From Octopus sinensis (taxonomy: Eukaryota), in NCBI RefSeq assembly GCF_006345805.1, contig NC_043005.1, positions 90,272,001-90,336,000 on the forward strand: 64,000 nucleotides of DNA. The letters are read 5' to 3'. Position 1 is the first letter of the stretch. Each line of letters opens with the position of its first letter. Below the pieces are notes generated by a model. That model was not told the origin of the DNA. It did not search any database and saw only the letters and a list, made by a program, of their open reading frames with translations. This document shows, piece after piece, positions 7,576 to 21,539 of this stretch. Both the position numbers and the translations under genes were made by a program.

Positions 7576-7720
7576 TTGGCCAAAAGTCACCTGGCAGTAA
7601 ATCAAAACCAATTAATTCCAAAGTTTATTAAGTTTAACACACTGAATGAATTTAATAAAAGCATCTAAATCTGTTATATATTATATATATTATATATATA
7701 TATATTATATATATATATAT

Positions 7721-8074
7721 AATAATAAATCTCTAAGCGAGGTATAAACAGTAACTGCTCTGTAATATAAGCGGGACCAGCCATCTGAATGTGGCTAGGG
7801 ACAGGGCGGGGTGGTGGGGGTGTTACTGATGCATTTAGCCCCAGGCGACTATAGACGTCACCAGGAGAGCCGACACCATCACGGTGTCCTTGCTAGCCTG
7901 TAAAGGGAGATCAGCCTCCCCGAAGATACGGATGCTACACACGGACCGGTTTCGAGGTGGTCGCCTCTCGTCAGCGCATGGCAAGCACCGTTCTTCGTTG
8001 AGGGACTTCCTCTACAGGCTAGAATATATAGATTTTCACAGTAAACACAGTCACTGGCGTCGAAAATCTGTCGA
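7721..8074 (-). mobile_element. Inverted full monomer of ~360-nt hammerhead-containing repeat (element E); retrozyme / Penelope-like pLTR type
   Basis: Reverse complement of the plus-strand sequence at 8298-8587 joined to 8077-8288; flanked on the left by (TA)n; carries a hammerhead core. Confidence 0.8.
7938..7980 (-). ncRNA. Type I hammerhead ribozyme (minimal helix III)
   Basis: Minus strand reads CAUGCG-CUGACGA-GAGG(cgacca)CCUC-GAAA-CCGG-UC-CGUGUG. All core nucleotides are canonical; helix I has 6 pairs (2 G-U), helix II 4 bp, helix III is palindromic ACCGGU. Predicted cleavage after the C at 7944. Confidence 0.85.
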
Positions 8075-8076
8075 AA

Positions 8077-8587
8077 ATCCGTATCTTCGGGGAGGCTGAT
8101 CTCCCTTTACAGGCTAGCAAGGACACCGTGATGGTGTCGGCTCTCCTGGTGACGTCTATAGTCGCCTGGGGCTAAATGCATCAGTAACACCCCCACCACC
8201 CCGCCCTGTCCTAGCCACATTCAGATGGCTGGTCCCGCTTATATTACAGAGCAGTTACTGTTTATACCTCGCTTAGAGATTTATTATTGTTATCGAACAG
8301 ATTTTCGACGCCAGTGACTGTGTTTACAGTGAAAATCTATATATTTCTAGCCAGTAGAGAAGTCCCTCAACGAAGAACGGTGCTTGCCATGCGCTGACGA
8401 GAGGCGACCACCTCGAAACCGGTCCATGTGTAGCATCCGTATCTTCGGGGAGGCTGATCTCCCTTTACAGGCTAGCAAGGACACCGTGATGGTGTCGGCT
8501 CTCCTGGTGACGTCTATAGTCGCCTGGGGCTAAATGCATCAGTAACACCCCCACCACCCCGCCCTGTCCCTAGCCACATTCAGATGG
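8077..8587 (+). mobile_element. Head-to-tail tandem (~1.4 monomers, period 358 nt) of element E
   Basis: ATCCGTATCTTCGG... recurs at 8077 and 8435; monomer junction ...AGAGATTTATTATT|GTTATCGAACAG at 8288/8289. Confidence 0.85.
8388..8430 (+). ncRNA. Type I hammerhead ribozyme (minimal helix III), plus-strand copy
   Basis: CATGCG-CTGACGA(8394-8400)-GAGG..CCTC-GAAA(8415-8418)-CCGG-TC(8423-8424)-CATGTG. Canonical core; one C-A mismatch in helix I compared with the minus-strand copy. Confidence 0.8.
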
Positions 8588-8713
8588 TTAGTTGCCCGTT
8601 TTCAGTTTCAATTTTCCTGTAACAAGCGGATATAAGTGGATAAAACAGTGTATTTGGCTTTAGAATAACCCTCTTTAGCCCTTAATATATGATATATATA
8701 TATATATATATAT

Positions 8714-8892
8714 AGTTGGAATTTACAAAAAAAAAAAACAACGAAAGACTAAGATGGGTGTGTAAGCAACAAATATATTAGTTTAACACTCGGGAAGTGA
8801 GGAAGGCTTTTACCTTTCGAGCCTACGCTCTTCAACAGAAAGGGACACAGAAATAAACAGAGAGAAAATAGAAGGTTTAGTGGCTAGTGATC
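8714..8892 (-). mobile_element. (TA)n-flanked element F carrying a variant hammerhead-like motif
   Basis: Homologous to 10051-10228 (-) and 20596-20775 (+). Minus strand contains CUUU-CUGUUGA-A-GAGC(guag)GCUC-GAAA-GG-UA-AAAG. Confidence 0.65.
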
Positions 8893-8904
8893 AATCATAT
8901 TGAA

Positions 8905-8975
<71 letters not shown>

Positions 8976-8992
8976 ATATATAGATATGTGTG

Positions 8993-9054
<62 letters not shown>

Positions 9055-9055
<1 letters not shown>

Positions 9056-9409
9056 ATAATAAATCTCTAAGCGAGGTATAAACAGTAACTGCTCTGTAAT
9101 ATAAGCGGGACCAGCCATCTGAATGTGGCTAGGGACAGGGCGGGGTGGTGGGGGTGTTACTGATGCATTTAGCCCCAGGCGACTATAGACGTCACCAGGA
9201 GAGCCGACACCATCACGGTGTCCTTGCTAGCCTGTAAAGGGAGATCAGCCTCCCCGAAGATACGGATGCTACACACGGACCGGTTTCGAGGTGGTCGCCT
9301 CTCGTCAGCGCATGGCAAGCACCGTTCTTCGTTGAGGGACTTCCTCTACAGGCTAGAAATATATAGATTTTCACTGTAAACACAGTCACTGGCGTCGAAA
9401 ATCTGTCGA
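9055..9409 (-). mobile_element. Inverted monomer of element E, second cassette
   Basis: Near-identical to 7721-8074. Confidence 0.8.
9272..9314 (-). ncRNA. Type I hammerhead ribozyme, second cassette, minus strand
   Basis: Identical core and helices to 7938-7980. Confidence 0.85.
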
Positions 9410-9411
9410 AA

Positions 9412-9924
9412 ATCCGTATCTTCGGGGAGGCTGATCTCCCTTTACAGGCTAGCAAGGACACCGTGATGGTGTCGGCTCTCCTGGTGACGTCTATAGTCGC
9501 CTGGGGCTAAATGCATCAGTAACACCCCCACCACCCCGCCCTGTCCCTAGCCACATTCAGATGGCTGGTCCCGCTTATATTACAGAGCAGTTACTGTTTA
9601 TACCTCGCTTAGAGATTTATTATTGTTATCGAACAGATTTTCGACGCCAGTGACTGTGTTTACAGTGAAAATCTATATATTTCTAGCCAGTAGAGGAAGT
9701 CCCTCAACGAAGAACGGTGCTTGCCATGCGCTGACGAGAGGCGACCACCTCGAAACCGGTCCATGTGTAGCATCCGTATCTTCGGGGAGGCTGATCTCCC
9801 TTTACAGGCTAGCAAGGACACCGTGATGGTGTCGGCTCTCCTGGTGACGTCTATAGTCGCCTGGGGCTAAATGCATCAGTAACACCCCCACCACCCCGCC
9901 CTGTCCCTAGCCACATTCAGATGG
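9412..9924 (+). mobile_element. Head-to-tail tandem of element E (period 360 nt), second cassette
   Basis: ATCCGTATC recurs at 9412 and 9772. Confidence 0.85.
9725..9767 (+). ncRNA. Type I hammerhead ribozyme, second cassette, plus strand
   Basis: CATGCG-CTGACGA(9731-9737)-GAGG..CCTC-GAAA(9752-9755)-CCGG-TC-CATGTG. Confidence 0.8.
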
Positions 9925-10050
9925 TTAGTTGCCCGTTTTCAGTTTCAATTTTCCTGTAACAAGCGGATTATAAGTGGATAAAACAGTGTATTTGGCTTTA
10001 GAATAACCCTCTTTAGCCCTTAATTATATGATATATATATATATATATAT

Positions 10051-10228
10051 AGTTGGAATTTACAAAAAAAAAACAACGAAAGACTAAGATGGGTGTGTAA
10101 GCAACAAATATATTAGTTTAACACTCGGGAAGTGAGGAAGGCTTTTACCTTTCGAGCCTACGCTCTTCAACAGAAAGGGACACAGAAATAAACAGAGAGA
10201 AAATAGAAAGGTTTAGTGGCTAGTGATC
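10051..10228 (-). mobile_element. Element F, second cassette
   Basis: Near-identical to 8714-8892. Confidence 0.65.
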
Positions 10229-12164: not shown

Positions 12165-12329
12165 TTCCTCTATTTACATAATATTGAGGTCTCTTTCTTT
12201 CTTTTGTTATCTTACTGTTTTTACCAATATACATATATATATATATATATATAAATATATATATAGTTACAGAGATGTACTTGCATAGCAAGTGACTTGA
12301 TCTGAGATCGTGTGCTGGAACGAAAACAG

Positions 12330-12588
12330 TTGCAGCGTTGAAGGTGTTTATAAGCCATTTAAGAAACACACAAAAACCGTTAGATTCACTTCAACATTTA
12401 AATTTAATTTGTCAAAATATTTTCGTCGCTTTGAGACCGCGACCTGTTAGCACGATATTTTTGTCAGTGAACAGGTCGCGGTCTCAAAGCGAGGAAAATA
12501 TTTTGGCAAATTAAATTTAAATGTTGAAGTGAATCTAACGGTTTTTGTGTGTTTCTTAAATGGCTTACAAACACCTTCCACGCTGCAA
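12330..12588. repeat. Fold-back inverted repeat, 119-bp arms, 21-nt loop
   Basis: 12330-12448 is the reverse complement of 12470-12588 with a few mismatches; (TA)n on both sides of the host cassette. Confidence 0.95.
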
Positions 12589-20595: not shown

Positions 20596-20775
20596 GATTG
20601 CTAACCACTAAACTTTTTCTATTTTCTCTCCCTGTTTATTTCTGTGTTCCTTTCTGTTGAAGAGCATAGGCTTGAAACGTAAAAGACTTTCTCACTTCCT
20701 GAGCGTTAAATTAATACATCTGTTTGTTGTTTACACACCTGTCTTCGTCTTTTGTTTTTTGAAAATTTTCACTAT
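20596..20775 (+). mobile_element. Element F, dispersed copy with hammerhead-like motif at 20650-20685
   Basis: CTTT-CTGTTGA-A-GAGC(atag)GCTT-GAAA-CG-TA-AAAG; flanked by (TA)n and (TATC)n. Confidence 0.65.
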
Positions 20776-20794
20776 CTATCTATCTATCTATCTA

Positions 20795-20835
<41 letters not shown>

Positions 20836-20906
20836 AAGGAAATGAAGAAAATGCTGACAAAATAATTTAAGTAATTTAAGTAATTTAATTAGGTGAAAGT
20901 TCTTTT

Positions 20907-20960
20907 AAAAATATGGAACGCTTCACGAATTTGCATGTCATCCTTGCGCAGGGACCATGC
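20907..20960 (-). pseudogene. U6: U6 snRNA 3' fragment (54 nt)
   Basis: Minus strand GCATGGTCCCTGCGCAAGGATGACATGCAAATTCGTGAAGCGTTCCATATTTTT matches the conserved metazoan U6 3' half with 2 substitutions; the 5' stem-loop and ACAGAGA box are absent. Confidence 0.92.
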
Positions 20961-21001
20961 GCAAGGATGACACGCAAATTCGTGAAGCGTTCCATATTTT
21001 T
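20958..21001 (+). pseudogene. U6: U6 snRNA 3' fragment (44 nt), inverted partner
   Basis: TGCGCAAGGATGACACGCAAATTCGTGAAGCGTTCCATATTTTT matches the U6 3' end, including the terminal U tract. Confidence 0.92.
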
Positions 21002-21111
21002 AAAAGAACTATCACTTAATTAAATTACTTAAATTACTTAAATTATTTTGTCAGCATTTTCTTCATTTCCTTTTTATATATCACAACTCGTGTTCCACAT
21101 CTCCTTTTTTA

Positions 21112-21160
<49 letters not shown>

Positions 21161-21284
21161 ATTAGAGGATATGTTAACCTTGTGAAGGGTTGGTTGCATC
21201 CAAGGAAATACTGGTTCAATACCTAGTATTGTTAGGGAATGAAATTCCCTTAAAACAATAGGTATACATTAAGCATATAGTTTG

Positions 21285-21539
21285 TATCCAGTTAAAAGAA
21301 GAAGAAAATGGAGATAAGGAAGTTAGCAATTATTTATTATTAACAAATTGGTCATCTTTGCTTCTTACAGCCATTTCAATTAATACTAAATCATTTAATT
21401 ACAAATTTAATGTAGAAATTTGTAATTAAATGATTTAGTATTAATTGAAATGGCTGTAAGAAGCAAAGATGACCAATTTGTTAATAATAAATAATTGCTA
21501 ACTTCCTTATCTCCATTTTCTTCTTCTTTTAACTGGATA
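21285..21539. repeat. Perfect fold-back inverted repeat, 124-bp arms, 7-nt loop (AATGTAG)
   Basis: 21285-21408 is the reverse complement of 21416-21539. Confidence 0.95.

What the first reader, a model, noticed from the sequence alone, without database searches (positions are those of the whole stretch)
20835..21073. U6 snRNA 3' half captured in a ~116-bp fold-back palindrome
Seen: both arms contain the U6 3' end plus ~70 nt of sequence beyond the U-tract terminator (AAAAGAACT.TCAC.TAATTAAATTACTTAAATTAC...). The turn occurs at the self-complementary TGCGCA in U6, leaving a 7-nt loop. Established: U6 retrocopies normally stop at the oligo-U tail or are U6-LINE chimeras with the U6 5' end. Inference: inclusion of downstream flank and loss of the U6 5' half suggest snap-back copying of a read-through transcript, of genomic U6 DNA, or of a U6-containing mobile element. 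A transcript would be a hairpin dsRNA complementary to U6.
Basis: partly seen in the sequence, partly recalled or inferred. Interest (0 to 1): 0.7.

Follow-up and report, generated by a model that had tools for sequence, protein, structure and literature searches.

The report
U6 fragment inside a Penelope-like retroelement fold-back
The palindrome is real, but it is a typical head-to-head insertion of a Penelope-like retrotransposon that picked up the last 54 bases of U6 RNA while it was being copied; this is a minor curiosity, not a new kind of element.

Summary
Arms 20828-20953 and 20955-21080 are 96% complementary around a 7-nt loop, and each arm holds the U6 3' end followed by 79 nt.

The 79 nt is not a U6 gene flank, because true U6 genes in this genome have a different flank. 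[quoted passage not shown]

The family shows four published PLE hallmarks:
- variable 5' truncation;
- an adjacent inverted 5'-truncated copy (about 29 of 40 loci);
- a 30-33-nt "tail" on one side only;
- insertion into (TA)n.

The U6-PLE junction is unique in the genome and identical in both arms. It lies exactly at the 3' end of the U6 RNA.

Most likely the PLE reverse transcriptase copied about 110 nt of its own RNA and then jumped to the 3' end of a U6 snRNA. It copied U6 down to nt 54. The cDNA then primed on itself through a 3-nt match (TGC/GCA) and copied itself back.

So this is a U6 chimeric retrocopy of the kind known from LINE-1, made here by a PLE, with the self-priming already proposed for PLEs. 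Interest is low to moderate.

The parts
20773..20827 (.). Left target flank: (CTAT)n followed by (TA)n microsatellite
   Evidence: Sequence. Every copy of the family lies in (TA)n.
20828..20906 (-). Inverted copy of the 3'-terminal 79 nt of the Penelope-like element (antisense on the + strand). It begins at the element's internal TATATA and has no tail.
   Evidence: 96% identical to the right arm; 78 of 79 nt identical to the linear copy L018.
20907..20960 (-). Antisense U6 snRNA nt 107 down to 54, running through the loop. This is taken to be the first-made cDNA.
   Evidence: 52 of 54 nt match a U6 gene of the tandem array, and both differences are transitions; the loop matches antisense U6 at 6 of 7 positions and sense U6 at 4 of 7.
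20951..20957 (.). 7-nt hairpin loop GGGACCA, flanked by the 3-nt self-priming match GCA (20948-20950) and TGC (20958-20960)
20958..21001 (+). Sense U6 nt 64-107, ending in the natural TTTTT 3' end. This is the copy-back of the left arm.
   Evidence: 44 of 44 nt identical to U6.
21002..21080 (+). Sense copy of the 3'-terminal 79 nt of the Penelope-like element
   Evidence: 63 or more genomic matches at 89-100%. (aligns to L018 and continues into the tail). (this end is colinear with the RT/GIY-YIG ORF at 40 or more loci).
21081..21113 (+). PLE 'tail' TCACAACTCGTGTTCCACATCTCCTTTTTTAA, present on this side only
   Evidence: the same 30-33 nt lies on exactly one side in nearly all of the 40 loci. 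Published as a PLE hallmark (PMC8557442, PMC3846280).
21117..21157 (.). Right target flank: (TA)n microsatellite

Best explanation
The locus is a single 5'-truncated, head-to-head (fold-back) insertion of a Penelope-like retrotransposon (PLE) into a (TA)n microsatellite. It carries a captured piece of U6 snRNA at the turn.

Inferred course of events:
1. The PLE reverse transcriptase, primed at the nicked (TA)n target, copied about 80-110 nt of the 3' end of a sense PLE RNA.
2. It then jumped end-to-end, without homology, onto the 3' end of a mature U6 snRNA and copied it from nt 107 down to nt 54.
3. The 3'-terminal TGC of the nascent cDNA paired with GCA ten bases back in the same strand, leaving a 7-nt loop.
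4. The cDNA was extended along itself, which reproduced U6 nt 64-107 and the 79 PLE bases in the opposite sense.
5. The product was joined to the target at the element's internal TATATA, which matches the (TA)n target. As a result only one side keeps the 33-nt PLE tail.

What is shown: the anatomy, the family membership of the flank, the uniqueness and identity of the junction in both arms, and the end of the U6 part exactly at the RNA's 3' end.

What is inferred: the order of events, self-priming as opposed to some other kind of copy-back, and which arm was made first.

The locus is most likely an inert retrocopy about 3-4% diverged between its arms. No function is indicated.
For: 1. The flank is a repeat and not a U6 flank. 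The 79 nt matches 63 or more places at 89-100% identity. True U6 genes have another flank.

2. The repeat is the 3' end of a PLE.
- Linear copies with variable 5' ends exist.
- At 40 or more loci the arm is colinear with 1.5 kb of 3' UTR and ORF end.
- The ORF pieces align at 48-49% identity to residues 16-261 and 306-658 of a 659-aa protein that Pfam reads as RVT_1 plus GIY-YIG.
- GIY-YIG is also seen in this copy itself (E = 4e-4).
- The DKG, YLDD and CX4CxxC motifs can be read.
- Homologues occur in Octopus, Argonauta and oysters.

3. PLE hallmarks as published (PMC8557442, PMC3846280):
- an inverted 5'-truncated partner at about 29 of 40 loci;
- the tail on one side only;
- (TA)n targets.

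4. The 27-nt U6-PLE junction occurs only in these two arms in 2.7 Gb. The two arms therefore descend from one synthesis event and not from two independent cDNAs.

5. U6 ends at its natural TTTTT, directly against the PLE sequence and in the same polarity. This is the signature of a template jump to an RNA 3' end.

6. The loop continues the antisense arm at 6 of 7 positions. In the 9 fold-backs with loops of 2 nt or more that could be scored (this locus among them), the loop likewise continues the tail-less antisense arm.

7. Full-length U6 copies fused at the T-tract to SINE-like sequence are common in this genome, so U6 appears to be a habitual jump partner here.
Against: - No hammerhead ribozyme, usual in canonical endonuclease-bearing (EN+) PLEs, was found in the 3' kilobase or ORF of the parent copy.
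- The GIY-YIG hit in the parent copy itself is just under Pfam's cut-off (21.1 against 22.6 bits), and the parent ORF is frameshifted.
- A target-site duplication cannot be seen because the target is a microsatellite.
- Which arm was made first rests on two discriminating loop bases at this locus. Six family members with a 1-nt centre point the other way, or carry an untemplated A.
- Raw reads and orthologous loci could not be examined.
- I found no published case of a PLE-U6 chimera, so the template jump is inferred by analogy with LINE-1.
Confidence: 0.85

Rival explanations
1. One reading: snap-back copying of a read-through U6 transcript, or of genomic U6 DNA, so that the 70-80 nt beyond the U-tract is the true downstream flank of a U6 gene.
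For: The sequence beyond the TTTTT is identical in both arms.
Against: In the 30 of the 48 full-length U6 matches whose flanks were read, none is followed by this sequence. The tandem array genes continue with TCTTACTCTTTCTAC.... The 79 nt occurs at 63 or more places without U6. It is the 3' end of an element encoding RT and GIY-YIG endonuclease.
Confidence: 0.02
2. A linear U6-PLE chimeric retrocopy was inserted first. It became a palindrome later by a DNA-level event, such as template switching at a replication fork or hairpin-mediated break repair, unrelated to retrotransposition.
For: Such mechanisms make short inverted duplications with microhomology at the turn. The 3-nt TGC/GCA match fits them as well.
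Against: About 70% of sampled copies of this family have the same head-to-head layout, always with the tail on one side and the outer end at the internal TATATA. The inversion is therefore tied to insertion. It is also a published PLE property.
Confidence: 0.07
3. A DNA fold-back transposon or MITE with long terminal inverted repeats that captured U6 DNA between its arms.
For: The copies are palindromic, short (200-370 bp), numerous and inserted at TA.
Against: The length and the centre vary from copy to copy. There are linear copies with graded 5' truncation. There is a one-sided tail. The arm is colinear with the 3' end of a retroelement ORF at 40 or more loci. The U6 piece is itself duplicated in the arms and ends at the RNA's 3' end.
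Confidence: 0.04
4. Assembly artefact: a chimeric or fold-back read was assembled into the contig.
For: Palindromes are a known artefact of some library types. Two other near-perfect palindromes lie in the same window.
Against: The arms differ at 4 stem positions, which are transitions or single substitutions as expected from age. The same architecture recurs at dozens of loci, each with its own centre. The structure has the one-sided tail typical of the family.
Confidence: 0.02

Closest known systems
[quoted passage not shown] 2013, PMC3846280; Craig et al. 2021, PMC8557442)
   Same: The parent has RT plus a C-terminal GIY-YIG endonuclease. The copies show 5' truncation and an adjacent inverted 5'-truncated copy with a palindromic junction. 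A 30-40-nt tail lies at one end only. The target is (TA)n. Capture of foreign sequence has been described for PLEs. Self-priming has already been proposed for the palindromic junctions.
   Different: The captured sequence here is a small nuclear RNA, joined exactly at its 3' end. No hammerhead ribozyme was found. The copy is very short, with 79 nt of PLE per arm.
U6/LINE-1 chimeric retrocopies made by template switching (Buzdin et al. 2002; Garcia-Perez et al. 2007; Doucet et al. 2015, PMC4476161)
   Same: The 3' U-tract of U6 is fused directly, in the same polarity, to a 5'-truncated 3' part of a retroelement. No homology is needed at the junction.
   Different: The partner is a PLE and not a LINE. 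The element ends in (TA)n and not poly(A). U6 is not full-length (nt 54-107 only), because the cDNA turned back. The whole chimera is duplicated as a palindrome.
LINE-1 5' inversions by twin priming (Ostertag and Kazazian 2001)
   Same: The 5' part of a retrotransposon insertion is inverted, with microhomology at the junction.
   Different: Twin priming inverts a different, adjacent segment of the RNA. Here both arms are the same segment and share a unique chimeric junction, which two independent primings would not reproduce.
Hairpin (snap-back) self-priming of first-strand cDNA by reverse transcriptases. This is the classical route to second-strand cDNA, and snap-back products of non-LTR reverse transcriptases are discussed in PMC11371274.
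   Same: The 3' end of the cDNA folds back on a few complementary bases and is extended along itself, leaving a short loop.
   Different: Here the hairpin product ended up integrated in the genome as a full duplex palindrome.
Fold-back (FB) elements and palindromic MITEs
   Same: Short, numerous, fully palindromic copies at TA sites.
   Different: This family is the truncated 3' end of a retroelement. It has variable centres, linear relatives and a one-sided tail.

Membership tests
Penelope-like element (EN+ PLE) insertion | The parent element encodes a reverse transcriptase with PLE motifs and a GIY-YIG endonuclease | tested here: met
   In L071 the ORF pieces align colinearly to a 659-aa protein that is RVT_1 plus GIY-YIG. 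GIY-YIG is found in this copy at E = 4e-4, 21.1 bits against a cut-off of 22.6. The motifs DKG, YLDD, CNRPNCGIC and CSGC within GIY..YIG can be read. The ORF of this copy is frameshifted.
Penelope-like element (EN+ PLE) insertion | The repeat in the window is physically part of that element | tested here: met
   At 40 or more loci the sequence is colinear over the ORF end, the 3' UTR and the start of the arm, at 88-96% identity.
Penelope-like element (EN+ PLE) insertion | Variable 5' truncation of copies | tested here: met
   Linear copies start at different depths, directly after (TA)n or other flank sequence.
Penelope-like element (EN+ PLE) insertion | An adjacent inverted 5'-truncated copy, forming a head-to-head inverted repeat | tested here: met
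   There are 23 head-to-head pairs in the hit list, plus 6 more diverged partners, among 40 loci. The window copy has the same layout.
Penelope-like element (EN+ PLE) insertion | A 30-40-bp tail at one end only | tested here: met
   The 30-33-nt tail lies on exactly one side in nearly all loci. In the window it is at 21081-21113.
Penelope-like element (EN+ PLE) insertion | Insertion bias for (TA)n, linked to the CX2-5CxxC linker | tested here: met
   All 25 inspected copies are flanked by (TA)n. The linker CNRPNCGIC is present.
Penelope-like element (EN+ PLE) insertion | A hammerhead ribozyme in the pseudo-LTR, usual in canonical EN+ clades | tested here: not met
   No hammerhead family was found at E <= 1 in L071, L018 or L037, and none at gathering score in 10 further loci. 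The 5' pseudo-LTR of a full-length copy was not available. Naiad-type PLEs also lack this ribozyme.
Penelope-like element (EN+ PLE) insertion | Target-site duplication | not testable with these tools
   The target is a microsatellite, so any duplication cannot be seen.
U6 chimeric retrocopy (template-switch type) | The U6 3' end with its U-tract is fused directly, in the same polarity, to the 3' part of a retroelement | tested here: met
   ...GTTCCATATTTTT|AAAAGAACT... appears in both arms. The junction is unique in the genome.
U6 chimeric retrocopy (template-switch type) | Full-length U6 at the 5' end of the chimera | tested here: not met
   Only nt 54-107 and nt 64-107 are present.
U6 chimeric retrocopy (template-switch type) | A LINE partner with a poly(A) end | tested here: not met
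   The partner is a PLE that ends in its tail plus (TA)n.
Functional U6 snRNA gene | A complete U6 (5' stem-loop, ACAGAGA box, AGC triad) with an upstream Pol III promoter | tested here: not met
   Nt 1-53 are absent. The Rfam full-length alignments are padded with PLE sequence. There is no array-type promoter or flank.
Hairpin-RNA / endo-siRNA or miRNA locus | Transcription of the hairpin and processing into small RNAs | not testable with these tools
   No expression data were available. The only Rfam match at gathering score is U6.

The most novel reading that the evidence does not exclude
The locus acts as a natural barcode for how Penelope-like elements make their head-to-head inverted repeats. 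U6 exists only as a sense RNA, and its unique junction with the PLE is present in both arms. It follows that one antisense cDNA was made on a sense PLE RNA, jumped to U6, and was then copied back on itself. This argues against both independent twin priming and the antisense-template self-priming considered in PMC3846280. It would also be the first described U6 chimera made by a PLE reverse transcriptase. A further-out reading that is not excluded is that the 123-bp hairpin is transcribed and yields small RNAs antisense to U6. I put that at about 3%.
Probability: 0.45. Interest if true: 0.4.

Novelty: new member of a known kind. Interest (0 to 1): 0.27.

Why it matters
On its own this is one decayed retrocopy in a repeat-rich cephalopod-type genome. 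Its small value is mechanistic. The transposition cycle of Penelope-like elements is still undefined, and nobody has shown how their inverted repeats form.

A foreign RNA of known polarity, trapped at the turn and duplicated in both arms, shows that the two arms come from one synthesis event that began on a sense template. It also shows that a PLE reverse transcriptase can jump to the 3' end of another RNA, as LINE-1 does.

A genome-wide census of such trapped RNAs could turn this single case into a test of the PLE mechanism.

The locus is also a warning for annotation. Rfam calls two overlapping "U6 genes" here above its gathering score, and neither is a gene.

Tried and rejected
1. True U6 flank. 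I compared the flanks of 30 U6 loci, and none carries the 79 nt.

2. A U6-bearing mobile family. A search for the 27-nt junction with up to 3 mismatches found only the two arms, plus two unrelated U6 copies followed by A-runs.

3. Hammerhead ribozymes or any other structured RNA in the parent element, in 10 family loci, and in the complex repeat at 7600-10100. I found only sub-threshold hits to generic AT-rich hairpin 'miRNA' models.

4. Pfam on the N-terminal ORF piece alone gave nothing. The RT assignment had to come from a colinear homologue.

5. A cheap-gap alignment meant to decide which arm runs deeper was too noisy. I replaced it with an explicit comparison of each loop against the continuation of each arm.

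6. Pseudo-LTRs or an inverted partner around the ORF-bearing copy L071. Only microsatellite repeats were found, and the copy starts directly after a (TA)n/(CATA)n tract, so it is itself slightly 5'-truncated.

The census is therefore limited to 40 loci.

8. The literature search found no paper that combines PLEs with U6 chimeras.

Full report
**Observation**

The sequence and the repeat finder confirm a near-perfect palindrome. The arms are 20828-20953 and 20955-21080, 126 nt each and 96% complementary. As a single strand it folds into one hairpin with a 7-nt loop. The energy is -179 kcal/mol against -39 +/- 4 for shuffles, z = -31.6.

Rfam's U6 model matches both strands above its gathering score, but these "full-length" alignments are padded. 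A direct alignment to a U6 gene of this genome gives the true content:
- The left arm is antisense U6 nt 54-107 (52 of 54 nt match).
- The right arm is sense U6 nt 64-107 (44 of 44 nt match).
- There is no 5' stem-loop and no ACAGAGA box.

The turn reads ...CCTTGC[GCA]GGGACCA[TGC]GCAAGG... Each arm continues for 79 nt past the U-tract. One feature was missed: a further roughly 33 nt on the right side only (21081-21113). Both sides are flanked by (TA)n.

**What the "flank" is**

The genome is 2.72 Gb in 13,516 contigs, and the window is C9:90,272,001-90,336,000. A search with the right arm found 63 or more matches to the 79-nt part alone, at 89-100% identity and without U6.

In the 30 of the 48 full-length U6 matches whose flanks I read, including part of a tandem array on C1 at about 141.9 Mb, none is followed by this sequence. 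The array genes continue with TCTTACTCTTTCTAC.... So the 79 nt is not a U6 gene flank.

Most genomic matches come as inverted pairs 45-185 nt apart. Read in full, these are fold-backs whose arms share a longer consensus of up to about 170 nt. Their centres differ from copy to copy.

Nearly all copies carry the same 30-33-nt extension on exactly one side, and all lie in (TA)n.

Linear copies with one arm and graded 5' ends also exist, and a few copies run much further upstream.

One such copy (L071) has, about 900 nt upstream of the arm, two overlapping reading frames on the same strand. The second frame ends in a GIY-YIG domain. The two pieces align colinearly, at 48-49% identity, to residues 16-261 and 306-658 of a 659-aa protein that Pfam reads as RVT_1 plus GIY-YIG. 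The motifs DKG, YLDD, CNRPNCGIC and a CxxC inside the GIY..YIG core can be read in the translations. Relatives are annotated in Octopus, Argonauta and oysters.

A 1.5-kb query spanning the ORF end, the 3' UTR and the start of the arm matched 40 or more loci colinearly at 88-96% identity. Several of these have abutting inverted partial copies. The arm is therefore the 3' end of that element.

**Identification**

A reverse transcriptase with a C-terminal GIY-YIG endonuclease defines the endonuclease-bearing Penelope-like elements (PLEs). The published description of PLE insertions lists these features:
- heavy 5' truncation;
[quoted passage not shown] - (TA)n as preferred target in clades with the CX2-5CxxC linker (PMC8557442).

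Arkhipova et al. [quoted passage not shown] Every one of these features is present in this family and in the window copy.

The one expected feature not found is a hammerhead ribozyme. No complete 5' pseudo-LTR was available to search.

**Where U6 comes in**

In the window copy the inner part of the PLE arm is replaced by U6 at ...GTTCTTTT|AAAAATATGGAAC... On the other strand this reads ...CCATATTTTT|AAAAGAAC...

The U6 part ends exactly at the natural oligo-U 3' end of the RNA. It has the same polarity as the PLE. No bases are shared at the junction.

The 27-nt junction occurs nowhere else in the genome, only in the two arms.

This is the architecture of U6/LINE-1 chimeric retrocopies made by template switching (PMC4476161). 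Here the partner is a PLE.

Dispersed full-length U6 copies in this genome are also fused directly at the T-tract to SINE-like sequence. This suggests that U6 is often picked up this way here.

**Mechanism (inferred)**

A one-off junction present in both arms means the arms were copied from one another. They were not made from two RNA molecules.

U6 exists as a sense RNA only. The strand made first must therefore be the antisense one: antisense PLE followed by antisense U6. That is a cDNA made on a sense PLE RNA, which then jumped to U6.

The loop continues the antisense (left, tail-less) arm at 6 of 7 positions, against 4 of 7 for the other arm. The 9 fold-backs with loops of 2 nt or more that could be scored (this locus among them) all show the same polarity.

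The terminal TGC of that cDNA can pair with GCA ten bases upstream, leaving the 7-nt loop. Extension from there reproduces the right arm.

The tail-less arm begins at the element's internal TATATA, which matches the (TA)n target. Priming or joining at that microhomology would explain why only one side keeps the tail.

How the tail-bearing side is completed is not settled by these data. Six copies with a 1-nt centre (CTTATC-A-GATAAG) either have the opposite polarity or carry an untemplated A.

**Rivals**

- A read-through U6 transcript or U6 genomic DNA is excluded by the flank comparison.
- A fold-back DNA transposon does not fit the graded linear copies, the one-sided tail and the colinearity with a retroelement ORF.
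- Later palindromisation of a linear chimera at the DNA level is possible but unnecessary, since about 70% of sampled copies have the same layout.
- An assembly artefact is unlikely. The arms differ at four stem positions, and dozens of loci show the same architecture with individual centres. Reads could not be checked.

**Verdict**

This is an ordinary PLE fold-back insertion that trapped the 3' half of U6 by a template jump. It is a new example of known processes.

It has modest value as a natural marker of strand polarity and of single-event origin in the still unresolved PLE insertion mechanism. It is also a cautionary case for automated U6 annotation.

No function is indicated. The hairpin-dsRNA idea remains untested.

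Noticed in passing
window 21160-21539: About 200 bp downstream lies a second fold-back of an unrelated repeat family. A 249-nt unit (21160-21408) has 40 or more mostly linear genomic copies at 88-94% identity. Here its last 124 nt are followed by a 100% identical inverted copy (21416-21539) across a 7-nt loop. A few other loci of that family also have inverted partners.
   Followed up: partly
window 12330-12588: A palindromic element with 119-nt arms at 97% and a 21-nt loop. The 161-nt query 12300-12460 has 40 or more copies in the genome at 100% identity, each with a short inverted match next to it. This looks like a very young, probably active, MITE-like or fold-back family. A related copy sits next to a PLE copy in L023.
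   Followed up: partly
window 7776-9929: A complex block of tandem and inverted repeats, with arms of 135-297 nt at 99-100%. The whole block of about 1.35 kb is duplicated, and it is bounded by (TA)n and (CTAT)n. The layout resembles the tandem/inverted structures of PLE-type insertions. No hammerhead or other Rfam family was found there at E <= 0.1.
   Followed up: partly
L041-L070 (e.g. L043, L045, L048, L069, L070): Dispersed full-length U6 copies lack the promoter and flank of the tandem array and are joined directly at the T-tract to SINE-like sequences. Some partners recur (L043/L045, and L048/L069/L070). They look like U6 chimeric retrocopies. A tandem array of more than 25 U6 genes lies at C1:141.83-141.95 Mb.
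   Followed up: partly
L004, L010, L027, L028, L030, L036 and others (PLE family copies): Many fold-backs of the PLE family turn at the same place, about 167-170 nt from the 3' end, right after a GTC (sense ...AAAGTC|AGATAAGAGG...). This might mark the 5' end of a processed or subgenomic template RNA. No ribozyme was detected there.
   Followed up: partly
L009/L016, L015/L027, L026, L030, L036 (PLE family copies): Internal deletions relative to the long consensus are present identically in both arms of a copy. Some are shared between different loci, so deleted variants have themselves propagated, or the arms are always templated from one molecule.
   Followed up: partly
L033 (C6:30898225-30899861) and L032 (C9:38461105-38462458): Whole PLE fold-backs together with their flanks are repeated in tandem, three times with a 649-bp period and twice with a 1061-bp period. 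This suggests local tandem duplication after insertion.
   Followed up: no
L018 (C1:72062685-72062921): One locus has the opposite, tail-to-tail arrangement. Two copies face each other with their tails across a short (TA)n. It is the only such case among 40 loci.
   Followed up: no
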